NCBI GenBank assembly: GCA_002269645.1
Contig: NIVC01000684.1
Location: 428,576-492,575 of the forward strand
Source of the DNA: Macrostomum lignano
Lineage: Eukaryota
DNA length: 64,000 bases
Direction: 5' to 3'
This document shows positions 1-17,565 of this stretch, piece after piece (positions within the stretch are counted from its first letter, which is position 1; each line of letters starts with the position of its first letter). A program made the translations under genes and the position numbers. Below the pieces are notes generated by a model that did no database searches, had not been told where the DNA came from, and saw only the letters and a program-made list of their open reading frames with translations.

Positions 1-507
1 GGCCGCTTGCTGCAGGCACCGCACGGCCTTCGGTCTCGTGTCTGGCAGCTTGCGGTAGCAGTTCGCAGCCTCTGAGTAATTGTTGGCCGCATCGAGCTCG
101 CATCGCCTCTGCTTTGAGAACTGCTCGGCCGCGGCTTCGAATGCCTGTCCAGCTTCGTGCCAGTTTTGATGAAGCTTCAGCTGGTTGCCCTGCTGCAGAA
201 GCTTGGCGGTGTCAGAGGTTCGCTGTAGGGCCGGCTGGGGCTGCGTCAGCCTGCTTGTTTCTTCATCATCTATAGGAAAGCAACACAGACAAACGCCTAT
301 GGGTAACGTTAAATCTTCAGGTGACGTCATCCTGCTGGCTTCTTCATCTCTAGGAAAGCAACACGGACAAATGCAGCTCCAGCAGCTGTAGCAGCAGCCT
401 TCAGGTGACGTTGTGCTGGTCTCTTTATCTCTAGGAAAACAACACGGAAAAATGCAGCTCCAGCAGCTGCAGCAAATTTTGCGAATGCAACTGCAGATGT
501 TTCCCAT
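1..507 (-). CDS. NAPA-like: alpha-SNAP-like paralog 1 (5' part; runs off the window), N-terminal MG + three Cys-rich repeats
   Basis: Absent from the ORF track. Manual translation from ATG 507 is open for 169 codons to base 1: MGNICSCIRKICCSCWSCIFPCCFPRD...CCYSCWSCICPCCFPRD...CLCCFPID...GNQLKLHQNWHEAGQAFEAAAEQFSKQRRCELDAANNYSEAANCYRKLPDTRPKAVRCLQQAA. The core matches paralogs 3, 4 and 6. Acceptor ttttctacttgcag lies 3 nt before the ATG. Confidence 0.85.
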   Translation of the reverse strand, partial: MGNICSCIRKICCSCWSCIFPCCFPRDKETSTTSPEGCCYSCWSCICPCCFPRDEEASRMTSPEDLTLPIGVCLCCFPIDDEETSRLTQPQPALQRTSDTAKLLQQGNQLKLHQNWHEAGQAFEAAAEQFSKQRRCELDAANNYSEAANCYRKLPDTRPKAVRCLQQAA

Positions 508-772
508 TACCTGCAAGTAGAAAACAGTCTTTCATATGTAATTTTTTGTGTGTCTGCTTTTGCCGCTTTAAGTTTTCAGCTAATTCGTGCAAGGTGGGAA
601 ATGCATGAAATATTGTTGGGTATCTATCAGTACAGCTTCAGCAACTGGCCTACTCAGTTACTACAATAAAAAAACAGTAAAAAGATGGGATCACAAATAA
701 GTAGTTGATAATATAAATAATAATATTTTATTTTTTGACTTGGATCTGCATTTTACTATAGAGGAATTTATT

Positions 773-950
773 GGATTGTGAGGTATGGGTTGGAGATTGT
801 GAGGTATGGGTTGGAGATTTTGAGATATGGGATGGAGATTGTAAGGTATGGGATGGAGATTGTGATATATGGGATGGAGATTGTGAGGTATGGGGTGGAG
901 ATTGTGAGGTATGGGATGGAGATTTTGAGATATGGGATGGAGATTGGGAG
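773..950. repeat. 21-bp minisatellite (ggagattgtgaggtatgggat), about 8 copies
   Basis: Tandem units read directly; they account for the spurious 7-aa-periodic ORFs at 691-996. Confidence 0.9.
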
Positions 951-1499
951 ACATGACTATTCTATTTCCTACATTGATTGTGCAATTTTCCAGTGAATTT
1001 GTGTTTTTTATAGACTAGCAAAAAAGTTTTTAAATAGGTCTATATCGCGTGCAGACAGACGGATTTTATTAACGTTGGTTTTGCGCAAAGCAAAGATCTT
1101 TTGACGGTGGAAAATTTAACATACAGGTTAAACCAGTAAAGAATTTAATGAATTTGAAAAAAGCAGATCATAATTGACGAAATAGGCAAATAAATGAAAA
1201 CTGAAACCAAAATGTTGCTACCTACAATAATAGCGGTTAAAAAAGAGAAAACTCAGTCAATGAAATCATACCAGCAGTAAAGGAAAATTGCAGTAAATTT
1301 TGGCGCCAGAGCAAACATTTAGTTATTACTGAATAAATATGCGCAGAAACTATAACTAATTCGGATATGTTTAACGTAAAATAAAATAAAAGCTATCGTT
1401 AAAATTGACCTACTTTAAAAAGCTTGTACAGGGACTTCTAAAAATATTACCAGGTGGACTGGAAGCTGGAAATAATGCTACGCCTTTAACGAAATCCTC

Positions 1500-1800
1500 T
1501 CACAACCAGCGCTGAGACAATTCTGCGCACTCCGCTGACTCCTCAGCACACACAAGCGCGCCGATACGCTGTGTACGCAGGCACGGCACTCATGCACACG
1601 CTCACACAGGGTGTACAGCGGTCCTGGCTATCTAATCGGTCAGGCATGTGCACTCTGTGCCTTGGGGGTTGGCCCTCATGGCTGTGAATCTCACGACAGC
1701 CTCCATTTTCGTGCACACAAGCCCCAAATGAATGTGTTTGCGTACTCAATCGAACTAGGGGTCGTGGGCGTTTATTACCGCTGAGCAGCTCCGCCTCAAC
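1500..1800 (-). mobile_element. Diverged tRNA-derived SINE (same family as 4265-4630)
   Basis: 1528-1690 aligns by eye to 4345-4500 (cacaagcgcg...gtgtacagcgg...tgtgccttgggggttggccctca). Degenerate A-box (ctgctcagcgg) and B-box (gttcgatt) on the minus strand near 1745-1790. Confidence 0.6.
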
Positions 1801-2954
1801 ACCTTCACTTGGGGATCAAAGGACTCACTTGGTCTAGCCAAATCCAAAACACTGCTTGGGGCGGTAATTTTCAGATATAAGAAATAACAGTAGCCACCAC
1901 ATTGGCGTCAACATGGAGCCGCGTTGCCTTCTAGCTTCCAGTTCAACTCTCTGCTGCTACTTCCAGAAGTCCTTGGCTAGTAAATGATTTGAAAAGCAAG
2001 CCATACAAATGGATAGAGCGCCATATTAGACAGACCATGTAAACAGTAACTAGAGAAGACACTGGGACTAAAAGCAAATTTTAAGACGCAAGAAAAACAA
2101 AAGTACCGGCTGTTAAATAGTAAAGCATTGCTAAATTGACACAGATTGATTATTTTCCTGTTTGATAATAATCTATTTTTGCTAGTTCTCTAATCCAAGT
2201 GTCTAGATGTCCATGTTCAAGTCAATTTGCACTTTTTTCTGTTCTCACGCCCTATTTTTTTCCTACGCGGGTGTCCGCTGGTGGTAAAAACGATGGTGGT
2301 AGGGGCAGAGAGGAGAGAGATAAGCGTTGAGTTAAGAACCGCGGCAGCCAATCAGAATGGAGCGAGGAGAGAGACTAAAATATATGTCTACACAAGGAGA
2401 GAGAGAATTTGAGTGTTCCTGCACTAAAGCAGTTCAAGCCAAACAGACTGAAATAGAAAGTCAGCAAAAAATAAACAAACAAACTTTATACTCGGGTGTT
2501 GTGTTGGTTAATCTAAGATTGGGGCGACTAACAAATTCCAGATTAGCATAATAAACTTTGCAATAGAAATTGGACTCATAACTTTGCGAAAAATACCGTT
2601 TCGAGGAAAATGAAATAAACAATTACATGAAAAAATTACATTGCACAAAACATATGTTGGTAAATTCAAACCACCGTATAATTCAAATGATAAAAAGATT
2701 TTGTCGACAGCAACATATGGAAGAAGATTCCTACAATTTCCACGAAGTTGGCATTATTGCTGAGCCTTGTACTTCGCAGATTTATAAACCAGTAGAATAC
2801 TTATAATAAACTACAACAGCAGAATCATACAATAGAAAGCTGGAGATTTCTCGCCTTATCATCATTATGGCTTTGGCATGCAAACTTAAACCTCCAAGAC
2901 ATAGTAGGATTGAGTCGAGTCCAATGCCGAATATATTAATACTCAGGCTGCTAC

Positions 2955-4034
2955 TTACAGTAACTGCACACTGTCACCAGTAGCTAAAAACTGTCTCAGC
3001 TGGTCCAGCCTCCTCCTGGCGAAGTCGTCCAAGTTGTTGAACCTCTCGAACTCGGACACCGCGGCGTCGACGGCTGCGACGTCGCGAGCGTCGGTAGCCG
3101 AAGCCAGCGACCTCACCAGCGAGAGCTCGTCGGTGTCCTTGAACGAGCCGCACAGCACAGCCAGCTGCTCCGCCTTCTCGCCGACTCCCGCAGCTCCTGA
3201 GCACAGCAGGCACAGACAGCTCTTGGCCAGGTGGTCCTTGGCTCCGAAGCTCAACAGACTGTGCTGCTCAGCCGACACTCCCAGATCCTCAAACACTGCG
3301 GCTGCCTCTGCCAGCCTCCCGCAGTCCGCCATCAACTCTGCGGCCTTGGCGCGGCTGCCCGCAGCGCTGGCCGGACTGTCCTGGCCGCTCCAGAAGTCCG
3401 CCGCTCTCACGTAGACATCGATGGCCTCCTCGACTTGCTGAGATGCAGCCAGCAGGTCTCCAGCCTCCTCCAGCTGTCTGGCAGCGATGCTGAACTGGCC
3501 CTGCTCTGCGTACATCTCGGCCGCTTGCTGCAGGCACCGCACGGCCTTCAGTCTCGTGTCTGGCAGCTTGCGGTAGCAGTTCGCAGCCTCCGAGTAATTG
3601 TTGGCCGCATCGAGCTCGCGATGCTTCGAGAAGCGATCTGCAACAGTCTCAAACTTTTTGCCAGCTTCAAGCCAGTTTTTATCATGTTTGTTCCTGTTGC
3701 CATCGTCGATTAATCGCTGCTGCGATCCGTGCGTTTGACGCTTTCTAAACAACAGAAAGTACAGTACCAGCAGTAGCAATACTACCAAGATGCACAGAAA
3801 CCCGACAAAGATATAGGCTGTATGTAATTTCGCTGGTGGCACAGTTGGCTGAGCTGTTGGAGCTGATGTAGTCGTGTCGATAGTAGTTGTGTTTAAATAA
3901 GACGGATTTGACGTCGTTAGGACACTCGTCGTTGGTCCGGTCGTACTGTTGGCATCAGCAGCAGCGGCACTTTCCACTGCTGCCATTGCGGTACTATTTG
4001 AACTTTTGATTTCGCTGCTATTCGAAGTCTCCAT
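2955..4034 (-). CDS. NAPA-like: alpha-SNAP-like paralog 2: Ser/Thr-rich ectodomain + single TM + cytoplasmic SNAP domain
   Basis: The track start at 4094 is GTG; the first ATG is 4034 (METSNSS). S/T-rich stretch with NSS/NST/NTT sequons, TM YIFVGFLCILVVLLLLVLYFLLF followed by RKR, then alpha-SNAP motifs (W.EAG..F..AA, Y...GQFSIAA, LLSFGAKDHL.KS.LC, F..FNNLD). Ends SVQLL. Confidence 0.9.
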   Translation of the reverse strand: METSNSSEIKSSNSTAMAAVESAAAADANSTTGPTTSVLTTSNPSYLNTTTIDTTTSAPTAQPTVPPAKLHTAYIFVGFLCILVVLLLLVLYFLLFRKRQTHGSQQRLIDDGNRNKHDKNWLEAGKKFETVADRFSKHRELDAANNYSEAANCYRKLPDTRLKAVRCLQQAAEMYAEQGQFSIAARQLEEAGDLLAASQQVEEAIDVYVRAADFWSGQDSPASAAGSRAKAAELMADCGRLAEAAAVFEDLGVSAEQHSLLSFGAKDHLAKSCLCLLCSGAAGVGEKAEQLAVLCGSFKDTDELSLVRSLASATDARDVAAVDAAVSEFERFNNLDDFARRRLDQLRQFLATGDSVQLL

Positions 4035-4264
4035 TCTTGATTCTTGCGAGTTATTAAACAGATGTTCTTTAGTATGCTTTGGGTGAAAATGCACTGAAAA
4101 AAGGGGTGAATAGTGATATTGAAAATAGCGTTAAAATGAAGTTGGAACATAAAGATATTATCTGTTCCTAAGCTCTTTAAACATGGAACGGGAACATAGT
4201 TCTTGGTTTCTTTGATCAACACTGGCAGCTTGTAGGAAGTGAGGCAGACGTTACGTTAAGGTTT

Positions 4265-4630
4265 TAGAGGCATAGGGCTGTGTGCACCCTGGCGCACTTT
4301 AAGCGACATTGTCACACAACCGGCGAGAGGCATTACTGCCCCCATTCCGCCGACTCCCCTGAGCAGGTGCACAAGCGCGGGGATACGTACGCAGTCATAC
4401 GCACAGGCACACACTCACAGGAGTGTACAGCGGCCCTAACTTTGTTTATCGTTAGGCATGTACACTTCACTGTGCCTTGGGGGTTGGCCCTCAAGCTGGG
4501 CGTTAATTGCACGAGCAGAGCCAAGCCGAGGTTCCAATTTAGCTCCAATATTAATGTGACTGCACTTGGAATCGAGCCTGGGCCGCTGGCACACCAGAGC
4601 GCCGCGCTGGACCACTGGGCTACGTCTCCC
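4265..4630 (-). mobile_element. tRNA-derived SINE
   Basis: The minus strand begins gggagacgtagcccagtggt (A-box) ... ggctcgattcc (B-box), has no acceptor-stem pairing, and continues into a ~280-bp body that recurs at 1500-1800. Confidence 0.7.
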
Positions 4631-5324
4631 AACCAATTGCGTAAATTTTTCTGGCGAAAATTCAAACCTGCAGATATGTTTTGCAACTTAGATGAAACGA
4701 GCACAGTATATCGAGGCATTTAAACAACTTTTGGGTCAACTTTTGAATGTAGAAGATTAGAACAACAGTTTCTTTTTTAAACTATTAATTTCTACAACGA
4801 TTGAGACAATTCTTTGCGTACGGCTAAAATGAAAAAACCGACAAATTTTTAGCTAGGAAGCAAGCAATCTAAGAAATAGCACAGTAATTAGCTACATGGC
4901 AACGATCGATGCTAGTTTTCTTTGTCGGGCTCAAGACGGAATAGGCATGATGCGGCACTTAAATTTCACAGCAGCATCATAACCAGCTACAGCTTAAAAT
5001 GATTCAATAATGCAAGCAGACTGAAAAAATATGCAAGTGAAATTACGTACCTTTTGAATTCTGGAGACAAAACAAGCAAGCTACCGAAATATTACAATGC
5101 TATACAACTCGTAAGGATAATGTTTACAGCTTTCTACTAATTCGGTCTTATATAAGTAACGCCACTAATTAAATATAGAGTAAAAAATCACTGGCATAAA
5201 ATTGACGGTCTATAACAAACAAGGATATTAGAACCTACGGTACCTTGAAATAACTATTCAACTTTCGTATGCACACTAAAATGTGTTTCTCAATAAAATT
5301 TGAATCGCACAAAACCCTTTCCAA

Positions 5325-6347
5325 CTACTGCAGCTGCACCCCTCCAGTAGCCACAAACTGCCTCAGCTGGTGCAGCCTCCTCCTGGCGAAGTCGTCCAAG
5401 TTGTTGAACCTCTCGAACTCGGCCACCGCGGCGTCGACGGCTGCGACGTCGCGAGCGTCGGTACCCGAAGCCAGTGACCTCACCAGCGAGAGCTCGTCGG
5501 TGTCCTTGAACGAGCCGCACCGCCCAGCCAGCTGCTCCGCCTTCTCGCCGACTCCCGCAGCTCCTGAGCACAGCAGGCACAGACAGCTCTTGGCCAGGTG
5601 GTCCTTGGCTCCGAAGCTCAACAGACTGTGCTGCTCAGCCGACACTCCCAGATCCTCAAACACCGCGGCTGCCTCTGCCAGCCTCCCGCAGTCCGCCATC
5701 AACTCCGCGGCCTTGGCGCGGCTGCCCGCAGCGCTGGCCGGACTGTCCTCGCCGCTCCAGAAGTCCGCCGCTCTCAAGTAGGCATCGATGGCCTCCTCGA
5801 CTTGCTGAGATGCAGCCAGCAGGTCTCCAGCCTCCTCCAGCTGTCTGGCAGCGATGCTGAACTGGCCCTGCTCTGCGTACATCTTGGCCGCTTGCTGCAG
5901 GCACCGCACGGCCTTCGGTCTCGTGTCTGGCAGCTTGCGGTAGCAGTTCGCAGCCTCCGAGTAATTGTTGGCCGCATCGAGCTCGCATCGTCTCTGCTTT
6001 GAGAACTGCTCGGCCGCGGCTTCGAATGCCTGTCCAGCTTCGCTCCAAGTTTTATCGGCTTTGTGTTTGATTCCTTTGGCAACCAAGTTCTCCGCTGTTT
6101 CTCCTGTTGCAATTTTCTTGACTTGATATAGAAGCCAAAGCATCAATGATGATAGCAGCACTGCTAACCACCATGAGCAAACAACCGAAATTTCATCAGT
6201 AGTTGTCGTAGCCCGATGATGTTCTAGTTCAGTATAGTTGCAGCTCTTTGTTAGATTAGAACTGCCTGATGAAGTATAACGGTAGTAGAGCTGTATGTAT
6301 ATGTGAACACAACTTGCGCTGGAGTTCTGTAGACGTCCAATTTTCAT
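5325..6347 (-). CDS. NAPA-like: alpha-SNAP-like paralog 3: short ectodomain + single TM + SNAP domain
   Basis: 340-aa ORF, ATG 2 nt after acceptor ctcacag. Sequons NSS/NLT/NYT, hydrophobic ISVVCSWWLAVLLSSLMLWLLY then QVKK. Core nearly identical to paralogs 2, 4 and 6. Ends GGVQLQ. Confidence 0.9.
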   Translation of the reverse strand: MKIGRLQNSSASCVHIYIQLYYRYTSSGSSNLTKSCNYTELEHHRATTTTDEISVVCSWWLAVLLSSLMLWLLYQVKKIATGETAENLVAKGIKHKADKTWSEAGQAFEAAAEQFSKQRRCELDAANNYSEAANCYRKLPDTRPKAVRCLQQAAKMYAEQGQFSIAARQLEEAGDLLAASQQVEEAIDAYLRAADFWSGEDSPASAAGSRAKAAELMADCGRLAEAAAVFEDLGVSAEQHSLLSFGAKDHLAKSCLCLLCSGAAGVGEKAEQLAGRCGSFKDTDELSLVRSLASGTDARDVAAVDAAVAEFERFNNLDDFARRRLHQLRQFVATGGVQLQ

Positions 6348-7468
6348 AGCTGTGAGACGCAGGTGGGAGCCGCGGTTTTAAAACAGAAAAACGGGAATGA
6401 AAATGGCAATAAAACGTTTTGAAGTGTTCTTTGATCTACACCGACTGATTTTGAATGCTAAAAATGACTTGATATACACTGAATATAGCTGTCAGCATAG
6501 CATCATCACTTTAACAAATATTCGTCAGATACAGATTCTGTCAAACTATGTAGCTCTAACCACGTGTTCAACTAATTTGTATTCTATTAAATGAGATCTG
6601 ATGGAGGCGGCATTCTTATTTATTTTAAATAGACAAACAAAATACAGCATCCAGACACGAGTATTAGGGAGACGTGAACTAAAAAAGTCTCATTCATTAT
6701 AATCTACAAAATTTAAATAAACAGCTGTCAAACAGGTTTAGTTAGAAACTTATTGTTAAAAATGTCATATTTACGTTTTTAAGCTGGAAGGTTAAAGACC
6801 GCGGTCTATGTAAATTTGATAACTTGTTAAAATCAGCTGGAAAGTTTTTAAAAAACATTTTTTCACTAAACTTTGACACACGTTTTGTTCTGATGAAACG
6901 AATATTTTGAAGTTAAAAATAGTTTAACATGTCAGCCGGTTGCCTGCAAGACTGCTGGATGTTTCACAATACAAAGCGATGTTTTTACAACAAAGGTTAT
7001 TTAATATGAAATCAATGTCACCATGTAAAACACTTCGAAGTATAACAACACCTGTAGTTTAAAGTCGATACTAATGATAAAAAAAATATCTGAATTCGGC
7101 AAAAAATCAATAAAAAAGGATTGGAAAATGGATAAAAACCAGTTTACGAGTAAAAAGCAGAATTCGGCGCATTGGAAACTGAGAGATTGATCAATAATTA
7201 GTCTGATCCTCATGAAACAGGCCGATTCCAGTTTTAATGTTTGTTAAACAATGGATTACTAATTGTGCATCAGATAGATGAAAAATTAAAATAACACACA
7301 ACTAGGATTAGGACTACATACATTTTTGATTAAAAAAATGAACCAAAGTTATGATCAAAGTTATTTAAAAACACGCTAATGTCTGGAAAACGTTCACAAA
7401 ACAGCCTTGCCAATGAATAAAAAACAATCCGTCCGCAACTCTCCTCATTCGCCAAAAACCCTTCCCAA

Positions 7469-8317
7469 CTACTGCAGCTGCACCCCGCCAGAAGCCACAA
7501 ACTGCCTCAGCTGGTGCAGCCTCCTCCTGGCGAAGTCGTCCAAGTTGTTGAACCTCTCGAACTCGGACACCGCGGCGTCGACGGCTGCGACGTCGCGAGC
7601 GTCGGTAGCCGAAGCCAGCGACCTCACCAGCGAGAGCTCGTCGGTGTCCTTGAACGAGCCGCACAGCTCAGCCAGCTGCTCCGCCTTCTCGCCGACTCCC
7701 GCAGCTCCTGAGCACAGCAGGCACAGACAGCTCTTGGCCAGGTGGTCCATGGCTCCGAAGCTCAACAGACTGTGCTGCTCAGCCGACACTCCCAGATCCT
7801 CAAACACTGCGGCTGCCTCTGCCAGCCTCCCGCAGTCCGCCATCAACTCCGCGGCCTTGGCGCGGCTGCCCGCAGCGTTGGCCGGACTGTCCTCGCCGCT
7901 CCAGAAGTCCGCCGCTCTCAAGTAGGCATCGATGGCGTTTCTTTGATCTTGAGATGCAGCCAGCAGGTCTCCAGCCTCCTCCAGCTGTCTGGCAGGGATG
8001 CTGAACTGGCCCTGCTCTGCGTACATCTCGGCCGCTTGCTGCAGGCACCGCACGGCCTTCGGTCTCGTGTCTGGCAGCTTGCGGTAGCAGTTCGCAGCCT
8101 CCGAGTAATTGTTGGCCGCATCGAGCTCGCGTCACCTCTGCTTTGAGAACTGCTCGGCCGCGGCTTCGAATTCCCGTCCAGCTTCGCGCCACTTTTGACG
8201 AAGCTTCAGCTGGTTTCCTCGATTTACACGTTTTTCTGCTGGTTTTCCTCGATATGCAAAATAAATTGAAACTATAATTCCTCCGAAAAATACTAGCAAT
8301 AATAGATAGTTGTCCAT
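7469..8317 (-). pseudogene. NAPA-like: alpha-SNAP-like paralog 4 with an in-frame UGA (pseudogene or readthrough)
   Basis: ATG 8317 gives MDNYLLLLVFFGGIIVSIYFAY (TM). At 8134-8129 the sequence is TGA CGC where paralogs have CGA TGC. The same frame stays open to the stop at 7469 (GGVQLQ). Confidence 0.8.
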
Positions 8318-8475
8318 GATAGGTGCAAAGAAGGAACCAGAGTTATGAGTGCTAGATCTGAAAAGAAGAAAGGTATTATAACAAAAGACAGAGTGAAATA
8401 TCATTGGTCAGTTGGTCAGTTCAAAGTTGTTTTGAGCAGTGTCGCAAATCAAGGGGGCAACAGTCGACTCGGAGC

Positions 8476-8600
8476 CCAATCTAGCTCAGCCAATGAGAGA
8501 GAAGTAAGGCGAGTGGCCAAGCACAGGCGGACGAAACTCATTCAGGGGGGGGCAGGCCCAATCCAGCTCAGCCAATGAGAGAGCAGTAAGGGGAGAGGGT
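8476..8600. promoter_or_regulatory. Two 82-bp units, each with paired CCAAT boxes, upstream of paralog 4 (duplicated at 17567-17700 upstream of paralog 6)
   Basis: CCAAT at 8476, 8490, 8558 and 8572 (ccaatc[t/c]agctcagccaatgagaga). The function is inferred. Confidence 0.35.
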
Positions 8601-9744
8601 CACCGTCAGACACAGGCGGGCAAGAGGAAAGCCTGTTTACCGGCTGTTAGTCGGTCTGAATGGTTGCTGGGGTGCCACCCCTTTGCTCTCTTGCTCGCTA
8701 TGCACACGCACTTGGATTTTGTGCTCTTCAAGTTTTCAAGACTGGGGACCCAAAGCGAGAACTAAGCAGTTTAAACTGCTGCCTAAAAAGTCTAATTAAC
8801 TAACTTAGAATAAGTATCAAATTCTAAACAAGCTTATCAAGAAACAAGAAAAGAAACAAATAGAACATGGTCTTAACACTACGGATCATGTTTCTTCAAT
8901 GATTCTATCTACAAAGTATATAAGCCTTTTTTGGTTATTCAATCAGAAAAACAAAAAACTAATATCACACAATAAATGTCTTAGTCTAAGACTGCTACTA
9001 TTAGGCATATATTGAACCTCATTCTGCGTTTGTTCCACAACATATCGTATCGTTTTAATTTCATCAACGAATATTATTTTAGACATGTATAAAACTCTGG
9101 ATAAATCTGAGATTTGGAGTAAAAATAAGAGTCAAAATAAAACAGACAGATACGATTGAAAATATCATGAAGAAAACTACAAAAGTATGAAAATTACAAC
9201 CGACAATTACAACTTCTAACTGCTGTTTTAACTTCAACAGTTAAAAGTGTGACCAAACAGATTGAACTTCAAGACAACTTTACAATGCAGTTCGGTTAAA
9301 TTTTTAGTCAAGAAAAAAACATTCAAGGTTGTCGCAATATTTAAATATAGCGAATATTATAACAAAATAATCACTTGTTTTGATTGTCAACGGGCCTTTC
9401 CGTTGTTCTAAACTGTACTGAAATATGGACCATCATTAGTCTGATAGGAATTTTATGAAATGAAAACCAATTGATCCCTATCTATACTAACAAAATATTG
9501 TAGAGAAAATATACAAAACACTAAAAAGTTACCAGGGGCTAGGCCAATTAAGTAAATTATTACAAAATACACAGATAATGAGCCTAACATACAATTAGTA
9601 ACAGCATTCTTGTATTTTTGTGTATGTTACTGTCTTCTGTATGCTATTATTGTTATAACATTAGTGTTATTCGTCACTACACAACAGTTTCGCCAAACAA
9701 GAAATTGTAAGTCGGGACGGATTAAAACAGTCAACTTCTTCTCT

Positions 9745-11319
9745 CTAAACAAGCTCAACCGTCGACGGCGTCGAGGCTTGATAATTTTTACGAGCATATT
9801 GTATCCGGCGCATGTCGAACTCGTCCAAATTGTTGAATCTCTCGTACTCGGTCACCGCCTCGTCGAAAGCATCGACACTGTTGGCTGCTGAGAGTCCTTT
9901 GACCAGAGCGAACTCGTCACTTCTAGCGAATGACTCACTCTTGGCTGCCAGTTCATCGGCCTGTTTTGAGCAGGCTTCGGGATTCATTGCAAGGCACAGG
10001 CACGACTTGAGCATGTGATCATTGGCTCCGAACTGAAGCAGATCGTGGCCTTGAGCCTCTTCACCCAGCTTTGCGAATTCGTTGGCAGCAACACGGAGTT
10101 GGCCCGAATCGCCAAGCAAAATGGCCAGTTTGGTTCTACAGCTTGCGGCACTGGCGACACTGTTCTCAGCACTGAAGTGCTCTGCTGCCTTCTGGTAGCG
10201 GTTTATGGCTTCTTGCATTGAATTCACATCGCTTACGAACTCAAAGCTGCTGAGCTCAGGATCGGAACTGTTCTGAGTATTCCAAGCGGGAAGTTTCCTT
10301 GCCAATTCCTCAGTCAGCTCACCGGCTGTCTCCATCAGTCTGGCCGCAATGCTGAACTGGCCGACTTCGCAGTAAAGTTGAGCTGCTCGCTCAAAGCAGT
10401 GAACGGCTTTGGATTTGTCCGTCTTGCAAAAACAGTTGGCAGCATTTTGATAGCAATCCGCCTGCTCGAAAATTGTGTTGCCACCTTGCTGAGAAAATTT
10501 CTCTGCAGCTTGGGAGAATGCGTCTCCGGCTTCGCTCCACTTCTTTTCCAGTTTGAATTTGTTGGCCTTCTGCATCAGCGACTCAGCGGTATCCGCACCA
10601 GGAAGTTTAGCCACGGCTGCATCTTTGAGCCATCTCGAACCAGCTGAAAACTTTTTTCTTAACCATGGTACCCATTGGTTCCCGGCACTCTGATCAGTTG
10701 CTGTCGGATTTTCATTCACTGGTTGACCCAGCTGACCTCCATCCTTTGTTGTCTGACCTTCAATCCTCGCTGTCTGATCTTCAGCCGTTGCTGTCTGACC
10801 TTCAGCTTTCGTTGTCGAATCTTCAGTCTTTGTTTGCTCACCCATCTGACCTTTAGCTCTTGCTGTCTGATCTTCAGCCATTGCTGTCAAAGCTGTACTA
10901 ACGATTGCAGAGATGTTCCAATTTAAAGGATTAAAATTACGCAATGGGCCTTCAGGTGCCCTAGTAGTGTCTTCATGGCTAGATTCGCGCGAGATTACTC
11001 GTAGATTTATGTTTGAACGTTCGCCGCGTTGCCCTTCTAACGAAGGCGTTCTTCCGCGTAAATGTTGAAAAGCGGCCCATATCAGTCCTTCCAATAGTAC
11101 TACTACTATTACTAAACTAATGGAGGAAAAGCTTGCTGCTTCTACTGCTGCTATTACTACTGCTTTTATTACGTCCTTTAGTAAATCTACTACTAACAGC
11201 AGTATAGTGAATAATGTGAGTATTGTAAATAAATACGGTTTCAATTTCCGCAGCAACCAGTACGCGAACTGTAGATCCAATCGAAACAGCCTCGGAACTC
11301 GATCAAATAATGATGGCAT
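9745..11319 (-). CDS. NAPA-like: alpha-SNAP-like paralog 5 (type B): long double hydrophobic N-terminal segment, short heptad linker, SNAP domain with a loop insertion
   Basis: 524-aa ORF, ATG 6 nt after acceptor ttttttcag. Hydrophobic YLFTILTLFTILLLVVDLL...SISLVIVVVLLEGLIWAAF. Core KFKLEKKWSEAGDAF...GQFSIAA...LLQFGANDHMLKSCLC...YERFNNLDEF. Ends STVELV. Confidence 0.9.
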   Translation of the reverse strand: MPSLFDRVPRLFRLDLQFAYWLLRKLKPYLFTILTLFTILLLVVDLLKDVIKAVVIAAVEAASFSSISLVIVVVLLEGLIWAAFQHLRGRTPSLEGQRGERSNINLRVISRESSHEDTTRAPEGPLRNFNPLNWNISAIVSTALTAMAEDQTARAKGQMGEQTKTEDSTTKAEGQTATAEDQTARIEGQTTKDGGQLGQPVNENPTATDQSAGNQWVPWLRKKFSAGSRWLKDAAVAKLPGADTAESLMQKANKFKLEKKWSEAGDAFSQAAEKFSQQGGNTIFEQADCYQNAANCFCKTDKSKAVHCFERAAQLYCEVGQFSIAARLMETAGELTEELARKLPAWNTQNSSDPELSSFEFVSDVNSMQEAINRYQKAAEHFSAENSVASAASCRTKLAILLGDSGQLRVAANEFAKLGEEAQGHDLLQFGANDHMLKSCLCLAMNPEACSKQADELAAKSESFARSDEFALVKGLSAANSVDAFDEAVTEYERFNNLDEFDMRRIQYARKNYQASTPSTVELV

Positions 11320-11463
11320 TTTTGTCTGAAAAAAAGTGTCAGTTTGAATTGTTGTTAGAAAAATGCTGAGCTTGGCTAAACAGGTAATAACGAGCGCACA
11401 CGTTCTTAAATTTTAGCTGCTTTTTTTACTAATTTTCGAGCCAGATAATTTTAAAGTAGTTTA

Positions 11464-12263
11464 CGAGGGCTGTCTCAAAAGTAGTTTTACTTTTCATGAT
11501 ATCTCTGGTTCTGCTGATCCAAATTTTGGAGCTAATATCATTTTGAACAGGTTAATAGCGGCGACTCTCTTCTTCCAGTTAACTTTAACATCCTTAAAAG
11601 CAGACAATGGAAACAAATGTTATAAGTAAAAATGTAGCAGGAGCTCGACCATAGACGTACACTACTTCAACAAGCTAGTGGAAAGTAGCGAAAGTACTTT
11701 TGATTGAATGCATTCAGACCTCCTTGTTAGGCTGCTATGACAAAGAAATATATATAAAAAACTTAAAAAAGAATATAACTTTTAAAGCAACAGAATGGGC
11801 TGGGCTAGAAACTGGGCTTCAGCTTTATTGCTTTTTGTTCCCTCCTTTTGCTGCGCTAAAAGTCCTGGTTGTGCATTCAAGTGTTGTGCAGAGGAGTGTG
11901 ATATACACCCTTTGGAGCACGGGGCACAGTTAGGCCGAGATTCATACTCAACTTTCATCGACTCATGGGTCTATCGCAGTTATTTACTGCAGTCAGTTTG
12001 CAGCATTCACAGCAGCCAGTTACCCGTTTGTCAGCTACCACCTCGAATTTTTGCTAACTTGTTGACTTACTGTAAGTCTATGATCGAGGTCCTGCTACAT
12101 TTTAGTTTACAACTTTCGTTTCCATTGTCTGTTTTTAATGATGTTAAAGATAATACAAAGAAGAGAGTCACCACTATAAATCTGTGCAAAATGATGATGT
12201 CATTTGGATCAGCAGAACGAGAGATATAATGAAAAGTAACATTACTTTTGGGGACAGCCCTCG
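11464..12263. mobile_element. Non-autonomous Tc1/mariner-type element (800 bp)
   Basis: Imperfect TIRs of about 60 bp (cgagggctgtctcaaaagta...gttctgctgatccaaat and its reverse complement ending 12263), flanked by TA at 11462-11463 and 12264-12265. No transposase ORF. Confidence 0.9.
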
Positions 12264-13611
12264 TAGAAACGCCCGGGAGCGAAATGATGGAAGAAAAGGT
12301 GTGGAATATTTTGGATTCAACAGCAAGCTATCGTAGTACGAGTTACAAGCATTCCCTATACCAAAAAAGAGTTTTCCCTATCCATCCAACTCTGAAAGTG
12401 TTTCGTTAAAGTTGAGATGAGCTTGGTTCTTATTAACGTTAAACTTTCAGTCGTTTATTGCTTACTAGAATTGATTGGTAGATATTAGATAAATGTTTAA
12501 GTTGCGAGTAGCTACTAAGAATTACTAGAAACTAAACTACGAGCTAGTTACAAGATTATTAATAACATAATTGCATGCTTACGAAAGATTTTGTAAGAAA
12601 ATTCACGTAAATATGAGGATGTTTTGTCCTAGAACAGTAGCTAGACTCCATAATAATTTCCTAAATTATGAAATAACATCATTAAAACGAAACCGTTTCC
12701 AAAAAAATTCAAACCGAAACAAATAATTTATTATTTCTGTTATTAAGAACGTTTTTTGATCACAGGAAAAAAGAAACTATCACGTATGGAAAATGAACTC
12801 TTAGCGCTAAAGTACATAAAATACAGAAGAAGTACAATAAAATTAGCAGATCTTACAGATAGAATATAAAATTTATGCAGTAGTAGATCGACTGGGGTCA
12901 AAGGAGTCCAGCTGTCTTTCCAACATAAAACGAGTCGTAAGAAACCGTTATTATCCTTGTCTAATTCATGACATAACTCATATAACAATCTGATGCACCC
13001 ACGGATGACAGACATATGAGGGGCCCTCGCGGCTACAAATCCTGAACCTGCTCCTGAATTTTTTATAAAGGCTTACAAAGCACTGTAATCTTAATTTCAA
13101 GCAGAAAGTCTCTCAGTAACCCAATCTTCTTGATAAGAAAAAATCTGCAATTGTTCTGTAAATTCCTACTCTAAATCTTACGAGCTATATTAGAAAGAAA
13201 ATAAATTACAAACAGTTAGGGCGTGCTTGTACAAACTAATGCAAATAAATTCATCTGAATGTAAATCGTAGCTAGTCTTTCAAAATAAAAAAAAATAAAA
13301 TAAAAAAGAAATATTTAAAGGCGTTACTTGAAGAAAATCATAAACTTTTGTAATAAAACGTTCGTAGCACCACTTTTTGATCACTTTAAATAAAAAATAC
13401 ATAATAATTAATCCATATTGTACAGGTAAATACATACTGTTAAAGTGCTCTTTCGTTAAACAAAAGGCACAAATTGGATAGCCCTATTTTATGAATTGTT
13501 ACAGTTTGAGGGGAACATTGACATTATGATGAAATTTTCTGTCTGTGGCGAATGCAGGATTTTAATTAAAGTTGGCCGCCTTAAACTCCAAGGCCCGCAA
13601 ATATTTGGGGT

Positions 13612-15850
13612 CTTAGTGGGCACCCCTGTCTCTTGGTGGGCACCCCTGTCTCTTGGTGGGCACCCCTGTCTTTTGGTGTCACCCCTGTCTCTTGGTGGCA
13701 CCCCTGTCTCTTGGTGTCACCCCTGTCTCTTGGTGGCACCCCTGTCTCTTGGTGGCACCCCTGTCTCTTGGTGTCACCCCTGTCTCTTGGTGGCACCCCT
13801 GCCTCTTGGTGGGCACCCCTGTCTTTTGGTGTCACCCCTGTCTCTTGGTGGCACCCCTGTCTCTTGGTGTCACCCCTGTCTCTTGGTGGCACCCCTGTCT
13901 CTTGGTGTCACCCCTGTCTCTTGGTGGCACCCCTGTCTCTTGGTGGGCGCCCCTGTCTCTTGGTGGGCGACCCTGTCTCTTGGTGTCACCCCTGTCTCTT
14001 GGTGGCACCCCTGTCTCTTGGTGTCACCCCTGTCTCTCGGTGTCACCCCTGTCTCTTGGTGGCACCCCTGTCTCTTGGTGTCACCCCTGTCTCTCGGTGT
14101 CACCCCTGTCTCTTGGTGGCACCCCTGTCTCTTGGTGGCACCCCTGTCTCTTGGTGTCACCCCTGTCTCTTGGTGGCACCCCTGTCTCTTGGTGTCACCC
14201 CTGTCTCTCGGTGTCACCCCTGTCTCTCGGTGTCACCCCTGTCTCTTGGTGGCACCCCTGTCTCTTGGTGGCACCCCTGTCTCTTGGTGTCACCCCTGTC
14301 TCTTGGTGGCACCCCTGTCTCTTGGTGGCACCCCTGTCTCTTGGTGGCACCCCTGTCTCTTGGTGTCACCCCTGTCTCTTGGTGGCACCCCTGTCTCTTG
14401 GTGTCACCCCTGTCTCTCGGTGTCACCCCTGTCTCTTGGTGGCACCCCTGTCTCTTGGTGGCATCCCTGTCTCTTGGTGTCACCCCTGTCTCTTGGTGGG
14501 CGACCCTGTCTCTTGGTGTCACCCCTGTCTCTTGGTGTCACCCCTGTCTCTCGGTGTCACCCCTGTCTCTTGGTGGCACCCCTGTCTCTTGGTGTCACCC
14601 CTGTCTCTTGGTGTCACCCCTGTCTCTTGGTGGCACCCCTGTCTCTTGGTGGCACCCCTGTCTCTTGGTGGCACCCCTGTCTCTTGGTGTCACCCCTGTC
14701 TCTTGGTGGCATCCCTGTCTCTTGGTGTCACCCCTGTCTCTTGGTGTCACCCCTGTCTCTTGGTGGCACCCCTGTCTCTCGGTGTCACCCCTGTCTCTTG
14801 GTGGCACCCCTGTCTCTTGGTGTCACCCCTGTCTCTTGGTGGCACCCCTGTCTCTTGGTGGGCGACCCTGTCTCTTGGTGTCACCCCTGTCTCTTGGTGG
14901 CACCCCTGTCTCTTGGTGTCACCCCTGTCTCTTGGTGGCACCCCTGTCTCTTGGTGTCACCCCTGTCTCTTGGTGGCACCCCTGTCTCTTGGTGGCACCC
15001 CTGTCTCTTGGTGGCACCCCTGTCTCTTGGTGTCACCCCTGTCTCTTGGTGGCACCCCTGTCTCTTGGTGTCACCCCTGTCTCTCGGTGTCACCCCTGTC
15101 TCTTGGTGGCACCCCTGTCTCTTGGTGGCACCCCTGTCTCTCGGTGTCACCCCTGTCTCTTGGTGGCACCCCTGTCTCTTGGTGGCACCCCTGTCTCTTG
15201 GTGTCACCCCTGTCTCTTGGTGTCACCCCTGTCTCTTGGTGTCACCCCTGTCTCTCGGTGTCACCCCTGTCTCTTGGTGGCACCCCTGTCTCTTGGTGGC
15301 ACCCCTGTCTCTTGGTGGCACCCCTGTCTCTTGGTGTCACCCCTGTCTCTTGGTGGCACCCCTGTCTCTTGGTGGCACCCCTGTCTCTTGGTGGCACCCC
15401 TGTCTCTTGGTGTCACCCCTGTCTCTTGGTGGCACCCCTGTCTCTTGGTGTCACCCCTGTCTCTCGGTGTCACCCCTGTCTCTTGGTGGCACCCCTGTCT
15501 CTTGGTGGCACCCCTGTCTCTTGGTGGCATCCCTGTCTCTTGGTGTCACCCCTGTCTCTTGGTGGCACCCCTGTCTCTTGGTGTCACCCCTGTCTCTTGG
15601 TGTCACCCCTGTCTCTTGGTGGCACCCCTGTCTCTTGGTGGCACCCCTGTCTCTTGGTGGCACCCCTGTCTCTTGGTGTCACCCCTGTCTCTTGGTGGCA
15701 CCCCTGTCTCTTGGTGGCACCCCTGTCTCTTGGTGGGCGCCCCTGTCTCTTGGTGGCACCCCTGTCTCTTGGTTGGCGCTCCTGTCTCTTGGTGGCACCC
15801 CTGTCTCTTGGTATCACCCCTGTCTCTTGGTTGGCGCTCCTGTCTCTTTG
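13612..15850. repeat. 19-bp minisatellite cacccctgtctcttggtg[g/t], about 115 copies
   Basis: Read directly. Two major unit variants plus minor ones (ctcgg, catcc, 20-bp gtggg). It generates the long pseudo-ORFs at 13496-15885. Confidence 0.97.
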
Positions 15851-16039
15851 TAGGAGACCGTCTGGATGAGTTTCTGGTTTCCTAAAAACACTCTAATGTC
15901 TTAAAAACTTTAACAAAACAGCCTGGAATATGAACAAAAAACAATCCATCTCGAACTCTCTTTACTCGACGTTAAACAACTATGATAAATATCAGACAAG
16001 CCAATTGAAGTTCCAATATCTTCCAAAGAGAATTAAAGT

Positions 16040-17116: not shown

Positions 17117-17291
17117 ACTCTCGGCTTAACGCTTCTGGAGGCTGAGCAAAGTTCTGTATTTTGATTAGTGCTAGAGCTGAAGAGAAGAAATGTATTATAA
17201 CAAAAGACTTGGTATGAAAAATCTTTGTTCAGTTCAAAGTTGTTTTGAGCACTGTCGCAAATCAAGGGGGCGACAGTCGATCCGGAGCCAA

Positions 17292-17565
17292 CTAGGAGGC
17301 AAGCAGTCAGGTCTATTCCACGGGCCGCCATCACAAACCCGAAATACTTCAGTATAACTCGGGAAACCGAAATAGAGTTAGACATTGTTGTCATTTTTGG
17401 AGTTATGATATTTTGGGTTTATGATGGGTGTTGCTAGCAATTTTGGGTTTATGAAATTTGTGATATTTCGGGTTTATGATACGCTCGTATTTGGGTTGAG
17501 GATGGAAATCACTTCCCCCCCCCCTATTCCACAGACGTTTGAACACCCCTCCTGAACAGCTGACC
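17292..17565. mobile_element. Small insertion with internal inverted repeats (MITE-like), absent from the duplicate region near 8475
   Basis: 8461-8495 is colinear with 17275-17290 joined to 17562-17585. The insert has atcacaaacccgaaat (about 17329) and atttcgggtttatgat (about 17466), a 15/16 inverted match. Confidence 0.55.

What the first reader, a model, noticed from the sequence alone, without database searches (positions are those of the whole stretch)
1..507. Paralog 1, missed by the ORF track, uses lipid anchoring: MG-start plus triplicated Cys-string
Seen: MGNICSCIRKICCSCWSCIFPCCFP, a second CCYSCWSCICPCCFP and a third CLCCFP, produced by internal tandem duplication of a ~29-codon unit. 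Established: Gly2 with Ser at position 6 fits N-myristoylation, and Cys clusters are palmitoylated in SNAP-25 and cysteine-string protein. Inference: the family reached membrane anchoring by a second, independent chemical route.
Basis: partly seen in the sequence, partly recalled or inferred. Interest (0 to 1): 0.7.

Follow-up and report, generated by a model that had tools for sequence, protein, structure and literature searches.

The report
Cysteine-string-anchored alpha-SNAP paralog in a flatworm
A flatworm (Macrostomum lignano) gene copy of the vesicle-fusion recycling factor alpha-SNAP has replaced its normal membrane-touching loop with a triplicated cysteine-rich tail. That tail is most likely fatty-acylated, which would make this a naturally membrane-tethered SNAP, but its expression, lipidation and true first amino acid are all unproven.

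Summary
Minus strand 507→1 encodes MGNICSC…, with 18 Cys in the first 78 residues. These lie in three clusters made by tandem duplication of an 81–87 nt unit. The reading frame runs straight into a SNAP domain (PF14938) and off the window edge.

The window is Macrostomum lignano. A 97%-identical copy in GCA_002269645.1 shows an intact 355-aa ORF. It has a full SNAP domain (E 3e-50) and the penultimate Leu needed for NSF stimulation.

The gene sits in a tandem cluster of very divergent alpha-SNAP-derived paralogs. All of them lack helix 1 and the apolar membrane loop of alpha-SNAP. Most carry TM-grade N-terminal segments; paralog 1 has none and has the Cys-string instead. A lipid anchor (S-acylation) is therefore the best reading.

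N-myristoylation is less secure. Three nucleotides upstream of the ATG lies an exact match to the M. lignano SL trans-splice acceptor motif (TTGCAG). The 35-nt spliced leader ends in ATG, and that ATG would be in frame, giving MVMGN… and burying Gly2.

No transcript, no annotation and no selection signal specific to this copy were found. I rate it a new variant of a known kind, of moderate interest.

The parts
1..507 (-). 5' part (169 codons) of the paralog 1 coding sequence. The C-terminal ~186 codons lie beyond the window start.
   Evidence: Translation. The 97.4%-identical copy L001:16111-17178 is an intact 355-aa ORF.
505..507 (-). Genomic start codon. The context is G at -3 and G at +4 (GtaATGg). 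The Gly2 codon is at 502-504.
511..530 (-). Putative 3' splice (SL trans-splice) acceptor: pyrimidine-rich tract tgttttctac followed by TTGCAG, cutting 3 nt before the ATG. Use of this site is inferred, not shown.
   Evidence: Sequence. Motif [T/C]TNCAG and an SL ending in ATG are from PMC8629364.
532..534 (-). In-frame TGA that closes the genomic reading frame 8 codons upstream of the ATG.
439..495 (-). Cys cluster 1 (aa 5-23, CSCIRKICCSCWSCIFPCC, 8 Cys), directly after MGNI.
358..396 (-). Cys cluster 2 (aa 38-50, CCYSCWSCICPCC, 7 Cys).
280..291 (-). Cys cluster 3 (aa 73-76, CLCC, 3 Cys, within VCLCCFP).
397..483 (-). Repeat unit 1 (aa 9-37).
   Evidence: TRF; alignment.
313..396 (-). Repeat unit 2 (aa 38-65), about 88% identical to unit 1 at the DNA level.
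229..312 (-). Repeat unit 3 (aa 66-93), diverged; it keeps only the C.CCFP.D.EE…S half.
220..273 (-). Acidic, Pro-rich linker (aa 79-96) between the last Cys cluster and the first SNAP helix.
1..219 (-). Start of the SNAP domain (aa 97-169), corresponding to Pfam profile positions 31-100 of 282. This is alpha-SNAP from about residue 40 onward; helix 1 and the apolar loop are absent.
2955..4034 (-). Neighbouring paralog for context: mucin-like N-terminus, TM segment, then SNAP domain.
5325..6347 (-). Neighbouring paralog for context: TM segment plus SNAP domain, 340 aa.

Best explanation
Paralog 1 is a real member of a Macrostomum lignano-specific tandem cluster of genes derived from alpha-SNAP (NAPA/Sec17).

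In the whole cluster, the first ~40 residues of alpha-SNAP are missing. These are helix 1 and the apolar loop that normally gives weak, reversible membrane contact. They are replaced by variable N-terminal extensions, most of which contain a transmembrane-grade segment.

Paralog 1 has no such segment. It carries a 78-residue module with three hydrophobic cysteine clusters (18 Cys) separated by acidic Ser/Thr/Pro linkers. The module appears to have arisen from a TGC-rich triplet-repeat-like stretch followed by two rounds of tandem duplication of an ~81-87 nt unit.

The most likely mechanism (inferred) has three steps:
- The hydrophobic Cys clusters give weak intrinsic membrane affinity.
- Membrane-bound DHHC enzymes then S-acylate several cysteines.
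- This locks the N-terminus on the cytosolic face of a membrane, as in cysteine-string protein or SNAP-25.

The ~20-residue flexible linker would then hold the SNAP domain next to the bilayer. That is the orientation alpha-SNAP adopts on SNARE complexes, where the N-terminus faces the membrane and the C-terminal Leu faces NSF. The protein would act as a permanently tethered NSF adaptor on one compartment.

N-myristoylation of Gly2 would add a co-translational first anchor, but only for protein started at the genomic AUG. If the mRNA is SL-trans-spliced at the TTGCAG site, the leader's own AUG is in frame (MVMGN…). Only ribosomes that scan past it would then make a myristoylatable N-terminus.
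For: Real coding sequence and paralogy:
- SNAP Pfam match E 3.1e-11 on the fragment and E 3.1e-50 on the full copy, profile positions 32-278 of 282.
- Best solved-structure relatives of a sister paralog are alpha-SNAPs at E 1e-26, against gamma-SNAP at 2.5e-5.
- 29% identity to mammalian and 34% to Hymenolepis alpha-SNAP.

Organism and second copy.

Lineage-specific family: family representatives score 513-523 bits and the next hit 134 bits. The nearest outsiders are ordinary ~290-aa alpha-SNAPs.

Long-term constraint on the domain: dN/dS about 0.15 between the two subfamilies.

Residue comparison with alpha-SNAP:
- Helix 1 and the FFSGLF loop are absent.
- K93/K94 align to RK, K122 to R, and K167 is kept.
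- The penultimate Leu is kept in every paralog.

Anchor comparison across the family: no TM-grade segment in paralog 1, but one in five or six sisters.

Motif and Cys statistics.

Literature:
- Palmitoylated Cys lie near myristoylation sites and among hydrophobic or basic residues. CSP and SNAP-25 rely on intrinsic affinity of hydrophobic Cys-rich domains (PMC3010063).
- The alpha-SNAP loop F27/F28 mediates membrane binding (PMC6353594).

A cis-spliced upstream coding exon is unlikely: only one 14-aa candidate was found in 2.4 kb.
Against: - There is no expression evidence. The copy in GCA_002269645.1 is unannotated and lies inside an apparently chimeric 419-aa gene model. No protein with this N-terminus is in the 5.8-billion-protein collection.
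- The two copies differ by 3 non-synonymous and 1 synonymous change in 169 codons.
- dN/dS against the young paralogs is 0.33-0.70, so no constraint specific to this copy or its Cys-string is demonstrable.
- One neighbouring paralog is already a pseudogene.
- K163, a SNARE zero-layer contact, is Gly in this family (PMC5540461), so canonical SNARE binding is not assured.
- The in-frame SL AUG could remove Gly2 from the N-terminus.
- No palmitoylation consensus exists, so S-acylation is prediction only.
Confidence: 0.55

Rival explanations
1. The same gene with the same Cys-string anchor, but the mRNA is SL-trans-spliced at TTGCAG|GTA and translation starts at the leader's AUG. The protein then begins MVMGN… and is not N-myristoylated. 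Membrane binding would rest on S-acylation alone, as in CSP or SNAP-25.
For: - The M. lignano SL (35 nt) ends in ATG, about 30% of genes are trans-spliced, and the acceptor motif is [T/C]TNCAG (PMC8629364).
- The site 511-516 is an exact match preceded by a pyrimidine tract, and the SL ATG is in frame.
- Flatworm SL AUGs can initiate translation: in frame in 28% of S. mansoni trans-spliced mRNAs, and required by more than 40 cDNAs (PMC9851317 citing Cheng 2006).
- The annotated 5' end of the neighbouring paralog's mRNA (L001:12258) coincides with an analogous tttcag| acceptor.
Against: - Use of this particular acceptor is unverified.
- The SL AUG has a weak context (U at -3), while the genomic AUG has G at -3 and G at +4.
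- In the neighbouring paralog the SL AUG would be out of frame and open a long overlapping uORF. This implies the SL AUG is commonly bypassed.
Confidence: 0.25
2. Paralog 1 is a young, silent or decaying duplicate. The Cys-string would then be a neutral by-product of triplet-repeat expansion and tandem duplication in a repeat-rich, polyploid genome, with no anchoring function.
For: - The Cys clusters are encoded by TGC/AGC/TGG runs, i.e. CTG·CAG-class repeat-like sequence. TRF finds 9-nt GCAGCTCCA repeats inside them.
- No annotation and no matching protein exist.
- Differences between the two copies are 3 non-synonymous to 1 synonymous.
- dN/dS is up to 0.7 against the closest paralogs.
- A pseudogenised neighbour lies at 7469-~8400.
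- The window is full of mini- and microsatellites.
Against: - The ORF is intact over 355 codons in the second copy and open over 169 codons here.
- All 7 aligned Cys are kept between units 1 and 2, and one more is gained.
- The start codon has a good context and sits next to an acceptor-like site, as in the sister genes.
- The anchor-less alternative would leave this the only short paralog of its subfamily without a membrane-binding element.
Confidence: 0.15
3. The Cys clusters bind metal or act in redox chemistry (metallothionein- or zinc-knuckle-like) rather than carrying lipid. A related alternative is that the first cluster acts as a signal peptide or signal anchor.
For: CxC, CC and CxxC spacings occur. 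Residues 11-24, following R9/K10, form a fairly hydrophobic 14-residue stretch (own calculation values).
Against: - No Pfam family matches the N-terminal 100 aa even at E ≤ 10, and no PDB relative is found.
- The clusters are rich in Ile, Phe, Trp, Tyr and Pro. By general knowledge this is atypical of metallothioneins and typical of S-acylated strings.
- Maximum KD19 is below 1.6.
- A luminal SNAP domain would make no sense. In the TM paralogs the basic residues that follow the TM segment place the SNAP domain in the cytosol.
Confidence: 0.05

Closest known systems
Alpha-SNAP / Sec17 (NAPA; Pfam PF14938)
   Same: - TPR-like SNAP domain: E 3e-50 on the full copy, 29-34% identity.
- Basic residues at the K93/K94, K122 and K167 positions.
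- Penultimate C-terminal Leu, the residue needed to stimulate NSF (PMC12019078; PMC5540461).
   Different: - Lacks helix 1 and the apolar membrane loop (F27/F28).
- K163 is Gly and R116 is Gln.
- Carries a 96-aa N-terminal extension with 18 Cys.
- Belongs to a multi-copy tandem cluster, whereas opisthokonts normally have one alpha-SNAP (PMC12019078).
- The family scores 513-523 bits internally against 134 bits to the nearest outsider.
Engineered TM-Sec17 (Song et al. 2017, eLife, PMC5540461)
   Same: A SNAP protein held on the membrane by an N-terminal anchor. The experiment shows this geometry is functional and makes the apolar loop dispensable for fusion with fully zippered SNAREs.
   Different: It is an artificial construct that uses the Vti1 TM helix. 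Here the anchors are natural, and in paralog 1 the anchor is a presumed lipid anchor rather than a helix.
Cysteine-string protein (DNAJC5) and the SNAP-25 cysteine cluster
   Same: A hydrophobic Cys-rich stretch in an otherwise soluble cytosolic protein. Weak intrinsic membrane affinity is followed by multiple S-acylation (PMC3010063).
   Different: - No homology: there is no DnaJ domain and no SNARE motif.
- The string is N-terminal and triplicated, with acidic spacers.
- Acylation has not been tested.
Dually acylated MG…C N-termini (Src-family kinases Lck/Fyn, Gα i/o, AKAP7α/AKAP18α, smAKAP)
   Same: Gly2 with Ser6, and Cys within the first 7 residues (C5, C7). AKAP7α and smAKAP are held at the plasma membrane by Gly myristoylation plus S-palmitoylation (PMC12329089). 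From memory and unverified here: the AKAP18α N-terminus also contains a CCFP motif followed by an acidic stretch.
   Different: This module is much longer and repeated. The N-terminal exposure of Gly2 is uncertain because of the in-frame SL AUG.
SNARE-machinery paralogs that swap a TM helix for lipid anchors (syntaxin-11/-19, Ykt6, SNAP-25). This comparison is from general knowledge and was not tested here.
   Same: Within one protein family, some members use a TM helix and others use Cys-rich S-acylated or prenylated segments for the same purpose.
   Different: Those anchors are C-terminal and belong to SNAREs. Here the swap is N-terminal and in the SNAP adaptor family.

Membership tests
Alpha-SNAP/Sec17 family (PF14938) | SNAP TPR-like helical domain | tested here: met
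   Fragment E 3.1e-11. Full copy L001:16111-17175 E 3.1e-50, profile 32-278 of 282. A sister paralog matches alpha-SNAP chains at E 1e-26.
Alpha-SNAP/Sec17 family (PF14938) | Penultimate C-terminal Leu (L294) that stimulates the NSF ATPase | tested here: met
   …GGVQLQ in the L001 copy, and Leu at the same position in all paralogs. Not visible in the window itself, because the C-terminus lies outside it.
Alpha-SNAP/Sec17 family (PF14938) | N-terminal apolar membrane-attachment loop (F27/F28) between helices 1 and 2 | tested here: not met
   Homology starts at about alpha-SNAP residue 40. Helix 1 and FFSGLF are absent in the whole cluster. Role of the loop: PMC6353594.
Alpha-SNAP/Sec17 family (PF14938) | SNARE-binding basic residues K122 and K163 | tested here: inconclusive
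   K122 aligns to R (kept basic). K163 aligns to G, with an Arg two positions later. K93/K94 align to RK and K167 is kept.
Alpha-SNAP/Sec17 family (PF14938) | Binds SNARE complexes and recruits NSF | not testable with these tools
   Needs binding and disassembly assays.
N-myristoylated proteins | Motif G-{EDRKHPFYW}-x(2)-[STAGCN]-{P} / MGXXXS/T | tested here: met
   GNICSC matches. About 1.2% of random N-termini would match, or about 0.5% if Ser/Thr is required.
N-myristoylated proteins | Gly is residue 2 of the translated product, exposed after Met removal | tested here: inconclusive
   True for the genomic ATG, with an in-frame stop 8 codons upstream. However, an in-frame SL ATG would give MVMGN if trans-splicing occurs at 510/511.
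N-myristoylated proteins | Myristate actually attached by NMT | not testable with these tools
   Needs metabolic labelling or mass spectrometry.
S-acylated cysteine-string type anchors (CSP / SNAP-25-like, functional class) | Cys cluster in a hydrophobic/basic context on a cytosolic protein without a TM helix | tested here: met
   18 Cys among I/F/W/Y/P with R9/K10. Maximum KD19 is 1.2-1.3, below 1.6. Criteria are from PMC3010063. A signal-peptide predictor was not available.
S-acylated cysteine-string type anchors (CSP / SNAP-25-like, functional class) | Homology to CSP (DnaJ domain) or SNAP-25 (SNARE motifs) | tested here: not met
   Only SNAP/TPR families hit the full copy. The N-terminal 100 aa hit nothing at E ≤ 10 in Pfam or PDB. 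The resemblance is functional, not family membership.
S-acylated cysteine-string type anchors (CSP / SNAP-25-like, functional class) | Thioester-linked acyl chains on the cysteines | not testable with these tools
   Needs acyl-biotin exchange, acyl-PEG shift or click labelling.
Metallothionein-like metal binders | Match to a metallothionein family; Cys-rich with few aromatic or hydrophobic residues | tested here: not met
   No Pfam match. The clusters contain W, Y, F and I.

The most novel reading that the evidence does not exclude
Macrostomum has evolved a family of naturally membrane-anchored NSF adaptors. In this alpha-SNAP offshoot, the reversible apolar loop was exchanged for permanent N-terminal anchors of different kinds: TM helices, a mucin-like stalk plus TM, and, in paralog 1, a triplicated S-acylated Cys-string with optional N-myristoylation. 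Each anchor would address SNARE recycling to a different membrane. For paralog 1, the choice between SL trans-splicing (SL-AUG start, MVMGN) and the genomic start (MGN) would switch the protein between a non-myristoylated and a myristoylated form.
Probability: 0.15. Interest if true: 0.8.

Novelty: new variant of a known kind. Interest (0 to 1): 0.5.

Why it matters
Alpha-SNAP is the textbook soluble NSF attachment protein. Its weak membrane contact through an N-terminal loop strongly stimulates SNARE disassembly. Tethering Sec17 artificially with an N-terminal TM helix has been used to dissect that role.

A natural gene family with the loop deleted and hard anchors installed would be an evolutionary replay of that experiment. 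Within it, a member that uses fatty acylation instead of a helix would add a new protein class to the list of Cys-string-anchored proteins.

It also gives a concrete case in which a flatworm spliced leader's AUG could decide whether a protein is myristoylated. M. lignano is transgenic-tractable, so all of this is directly testable.

If the gene proves silent, the finding reduces to a curiosity of repeat-driven sequence turnover in a polyploid genome.

Tried and rejected
- Protein search with the 169-aa fragment found no hits.
- Protein search with the full L001 copy found only three sister paralogs and none with a Cys-string.
- I built a chimeric two-row profile to carry the Cys-string into the 1.84-billion-protein search. 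HMMER kept only the 258 SNAP-domain columns, so Cys-string relatives elsewhere were not tested.
- Exact look-ups of three complete window paralogs were not on record. The window therefore comes from a different assembly or haplotype than GCA_002269645.1.
- A third copy was sought through P0179/L004. That contig (NIVC01000685.1) is 99.6% identical to window 1302-8206 but ends there, just short of paralog 1.
- A scan for an upstream cis-spliced coding exon (ATG…|GT[AG]AG, phase 0) across 511-2954 found only one unconvincing 14-aa candidate. I rejected it.
- A six-frame scan for other Cys-rich strings in frame with a SNAP domain in the window and L001-L004 found none. The other Cys-rich stretches are out-of-frame or antisense readings of satellites.
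- Selection analysis on the two copies had too few differences to be informative.
- Literature searches for the locus tag and for Macrostomum SNAP/NAPA found nothing relevant.
- The Cheng et al. 2006 paper is not held, so its content is cited second-hand from PMC9851317.
- Structure prediction was not run. The window holds only 72 residues of the domain, the N-terminal module has no alignment depth, and the Pfam and PDB sequence matches already settle the fold.
Full report
**1. What is in the sequence**

Read on the minus strand from 507 to 1, the window encodes MGNICSCIRKICCSCWSCIFPCCFPRDKETSTTSPEGCCYSCWSCICPCCFPRDEEASRMTSPEDLTLPIGVCLCCFPIDDEETSRLTQPQPALQRTSDTAKLLQQGNQLKLHQNWHEAGQAFEAAAEQFSKQRRCELDAANNYSEAANCYRKLPDTRPKAVRCLQQAA. 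The frame is still open at base 1.

The ATG is at 505-507. Eight codons upstream there is an in-frame TGA (532-534), with no other ATG in between. The ORF is absent from the mechanical ORF list only because ORFs that run off an end are not listed.

The first 78 residues hold 18 cysteines in three clusters: aa 5-23, 38-50 and 73-76. The binomial probability is 1e-9 to 2e-14 at a 2-4% background Cys frequency.

TRF reports an 81-nt period, 1.9 copies, 87% matches, at 315-474. Pairwise alignment shows three consecutive units of 84-87 nt. Units 1 and 2 are about 88% identical. Unit 3 is more diverged and retains only the C.CCFP.D.EE…S half.

The first half of each unit is TGC TGC (TAC) AGC TGC TGG AGC TGC. 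This is a degenerate TGC triplet run, and TRF also sees 9-nt GCAGCTCCA repeats there. The poly-Cys probably began as a triplet-repeat-like tract and was then duplicated. That origin is my inference.

Residues 97-168 match Pfam SNAP (PF14938) at E 3.1e-11.

**2. Organism, second copy, intact core**

A sister paralog in the window (5325-6347) retrieves 'hypothetical protein BOX15_Mlig022924g1 [Macrostomum lignano]' and two further proteins. All three are on contig NIVC01000090.1 of GCA_002269645.1.

Window 1-950 is 97.4% identical to L001:16617-15665. There the homologous ORF (ATG at L001:16111, stop at 17176-17178) is intact. It is 355 aa, with the same N-terminus apart from K10E and I11M, and it ends …RQFVASGGVQLQ. 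It scores E 3.1e-50 against Pfam SNAP over profile positions 32-278 of 282.

In that assembly the gene is not annotated. It lies inside a 419-aa model spanning L001:12258-19979, whose length suggests a chimera of the two flanking paralogs.

A third contig, NIVC01000685.1, is 99.6% identical to window 1302-8206. It ends there, next to the 21-bp minisatellite, and so does not reach paralog 1. None of the window's complete paralogs is on record by exact sequence.

**3. The family**

The window carries at least seven SNAP-domain ORFs, all on the minus strand. They are at 1-507, 2955-4094, 5325-6347, 7469-~8400 (pseudogene with an in-frame stop), 9745-11319, 16040-17116 and 18869-22105. The NIVC01000090.1 copy of the cluster continues with two more, of 350 aa and 359 aa.

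In a search of 1.84 billion representative proteins, the family's own representatives score 513-523 bits and the next hit 134 bits. There are 1149 hits at E ≤ 1e-3. The nearest outsiders are ordinary ~290-aa alpha-SNAPs of an acanthocephalan, Hymenolepis, Trichinella and amoebae. Identity of paralog 1 is 34% to Hymenolepis alpha-SNAP and 29% to mammalian alpha-SNAP. Gamma-SNAP is far weaker.

The family is therefore a strongly diverged, lineage-restricted offshoot of alpha-SNAP, as far as this collection shows. Published surveys state that opisthokonts normally keep one alpha-SNAP copy (PMC12019078).

Nei-Gojobori estimates give dN/dS of about 0.15, with dS saturated, between the paralog-1-type and the 524/1078-aa-type subfamilies. 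Within the young subfamily they give 0.33-0.70. The domain has been under long-term constraint, but recent copies are relaxed or homogenised by gene conversion.

**4. What changed relative to alpha-SNAP**

In a MAFFT alignment the family aligns to alpha-SNAP only from about residue 40.

- Helix 1 and the apolar loop FFSGLF (F27/F28) are absent from every paralog. This loop binds membranes and is needed for efficient disassembly of membrane-anchored SNARE complexes (PMC6353594 citing Winter 2009).
- Kept: basic residues at the K93/K94, K122 and K167 positions, and the penultimate Leu. The family ends QLQ, QLL, ELV, ELA, PLT or QLA, against DLR in alpha-SNAP.
- The penultimate Leu corresponds to the residue whose mutation disrupts the NSF/Sec18 interaction (PMC5540461; PMC12019078).
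- Not kept: K163, the zero-layer contact, is Gly, and R116 is Gln.

In place of the lost N-terminus, most paralogs carry a TM-grade hydrophobic segment. Maximum 19-residue Kyte-Doolittle means are 2.0-3.5. Paralog 1 reaches only 1.2-1.3, and canonical SNAPs reach at most 1.15.

In the TM paralogs, N-glycosylation-type sequons lie before the helix and basic residues follow it. This places the SNAP domain in the cytosol (inference from the positive-inside rule).

**5. How paralog 1 most likely works**

The N-terminal module is three hydrophobic Cys clusters with mean KD of 1.1-2.4. They are separated by acidic Ser/Thr/Pro linkers, and an acidic ~20-residue linker leads to the first SNAP helix. 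The module matches no Pfam family and no solved structure, even at E ≤ 10.

It meets the empirical features of S-acylation sites. Those features are proximity to a myristoylation site and hydrophobic or basic neighbours, and there is no strict consensus (PMC3010063). CSP and SNAP-25 use exactly such hydrophobic Cys-rich stretches for initial membrane contact before DHHC-mediated palmitoylation.

GNICSC fits the N-myristoylation pattern. Among the aligned family members, only paralog 1 starts with a matching N-terminus. The internal GQSHSK of P0003 also fits the pattern.

The geometry is right. In the 20S particle the SNAP N-terminus faces the bilayer and the C-terminus faces NSF. A Sec17 carrying an artificial N-terminal TM anchor is active and no longer needs its apolar loop (PMC5540461).

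I therefore commit to this reading: a cytosolic alpha-SNAP-like adaptor permanently tethered by multiple S-acyl chains, possibly primed by N-myristate.

What is shown:
- the sequence features;
- homology to alpha-SNAP;
- loss of the apolar loop;
- absence of a TM segment.

What is inferred:
- lipidation;
- cytosolic topology;
- SNARE and NSF binding.

**6.

M. lignano trans-splices about 30% of its genes to a single 35-nt leader, CGGTCTCTTACTGCGAAGACTCAATTTATTGCATG. The top acceptor motif is [T/C]TNCAG (PMC8629364).

Immediately upstream of the start codon the minus strand reads tgttttctacTTGCAG|GTA ATG GGA. This is an exact motif match after a pyrimidine tract. Joining the leader there puts its terminal ATG in frame, giving MVMGNICS….

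Flatworm SL AUGs can serve as initiators. They are in frame in 28% of S. mansoni trans-spliced mRNAs, and more than 40 cDNAs depend on them (PMC9851317). All known flatworm SLs end in ATG (PMC12582326). If the SL AUG is used here, Gly2 becomes Gly4 and cannot be myristoylated.

Three points argue against exclusive use of the SL AUG:
- Its context is weak (U at -3), while the genomic AUG has G at -3 and G at +4.
- In the neighbouring mucin-TM paralog, the annotated mRNA 5' end (L001:12258) coincides with an analogous tttcag| acceptor.
- In that paralog the SL AUG would be out of frame and open a long overlapping uORF. This suggests ribosomes commonly scan past it.

Sister paralogs also have acceptor-like sites 2-59 nt upstream of their ATGs. 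One of them, the 524-aa paralog, is again in frame.

Whether this acceptor is used is unknown. The S-acylation hypothesis does not depend on it. A cis-spliced upstream coding exon looks unlikely: one 14-aa candidate in 2.4 kb.

**7. Rivals**

- The gene may be a silent or decaying young duplicate whose Cys-string is a neutral repeat product. Evidence for this is listed here:
  - it has no annotation;
  - no protein with this N-terminus is found in the collections searched;
  - the two copies differ by 3 non-synonymous and 1 synonymous change;
  - a neighbouring paralog is a pseudogene.
- The Cys clusters may bind metal, or the first cluster may act as a signal sequence. Composition, lack of any family match and the biology of a SNAP domain argue against both.

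**8. Comparison, novelty, verdict**

It works like a hybrid of alpha-SNAP and a cysteine-string or dual-acylation anchor. It is a member of the SNAP family by domain and C-terminus. It fails the family's membrane-loop feature and one of the two tested SNARE-contact residues.

It is not a member of the CSP or SNAP-25 families. The resemblance there is functional only.

I found no description of natural SNAP-domain proteins with N-terminal TM or lipid anchors in the literature searched. I therefore rate it a new variant of a known kind.

Interest is moderate (0.5). The family-level picture would surprise trafficking specialists and is readily testable in a transgenic-capable flatworm. For this particular paralog, however, expression, lipidation and the true N-terminus all remain unshown.

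Noticed in passing
window 2955-22105 (minus strand): Tandem cluster of six further alpha-SNAP-like single-ORF paralogs with different N-termini. 2955-4034 has a mucin-like Ser/Thr stalk plus a TM segment. 5325-6347 and 16040-17116 each have one TM segment. 9745-11319 has two TM-grade segments plus acidic repeats. 18869-22105 (1078 aa) has about 45 copies of a 21/42-nt repeat encoding KAEDQTA-type heptads and no TM segment.
   Followed up: partly
window 7469-~8400 (minus strand): A SNAP paralog that is a pseudogene. Its frame contains an in-frame stop (…FSKQR*RELD…), and the listed ORF starts only downstream at an internal GTG.
   Followed up: partly
window 774-950; L004 end: A 21-bp minisatellite (8.4 copies) lies just upstream of paralog 1. 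Contig NIVC01000685.1 of GCA_002269645.1 is 99.6% identical to window 1302-8206 and ends next to this array. This probably explains why that assembly lost this copy of paralog 1.
   Followed up: yes
L001:12258-19979; L004:10001-23371: The deposited gene models (419 aa and 358 aa) span several paralogs. They look like chimeras joining the N-terminus of one paralog to the C-terminus of another, with whole paralogs, including paralog 1, treated as intron.
   Followed up: partly
L003:10001-12372 (protein P0003): Another paralog begins …KMGQSHSK, which also fits the myristoylation pattern. It has only a weakly hydrophobic segment, and an intron containing a GA-rich minisatellite. An in-frame ATG lies 6 codons further upstream in the genome, so its true start is also uncertain.
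   Followed up: partly
L001:18927-19979: A 350-aa paralog with an extreme N-terminal TM segment followed by CCC, a likely juxtamembrane acylation site. It also has an internal 41-aa duplication inside the SNAP domain.
   Followed up: no
window 23919-26023 and 38776-40340: Retrotransposon remnants: ORFs with RNase H (E 6e-9) and a weak reverse-transcriptase match. The local GC content is higher than in the surroundings.
   Followed up: partly
window 31644-35112 (minus strand): Three adjoining ORFs of 356, 578 and 241 aa. The first has a Schlafen AlbA_2 domain (E 9e-7). They may be one gene split by frame breaks, or by introns.
   Followed up: no
window 53872-64000 (plus strand): A very large 72-nt repeat array (about 113 copies, 55906-64000) sits inside a 2694-aa ORF. 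The unit encodes 24 aa, [24 protein letters not shown]. The array runs off the window end, and later copies carry frameshifts.
   Followed up: no
window 13619-15848, 45341-48023, 48519-49139, 51740-52444: Dense satellites: a 19-bp repeat × 117 copies, 22- and 24-bp repeats, a 12-bp repeat and (TATC)n. These generate most of the long spurious ORFs in the six-frame list.
   Followed up: no
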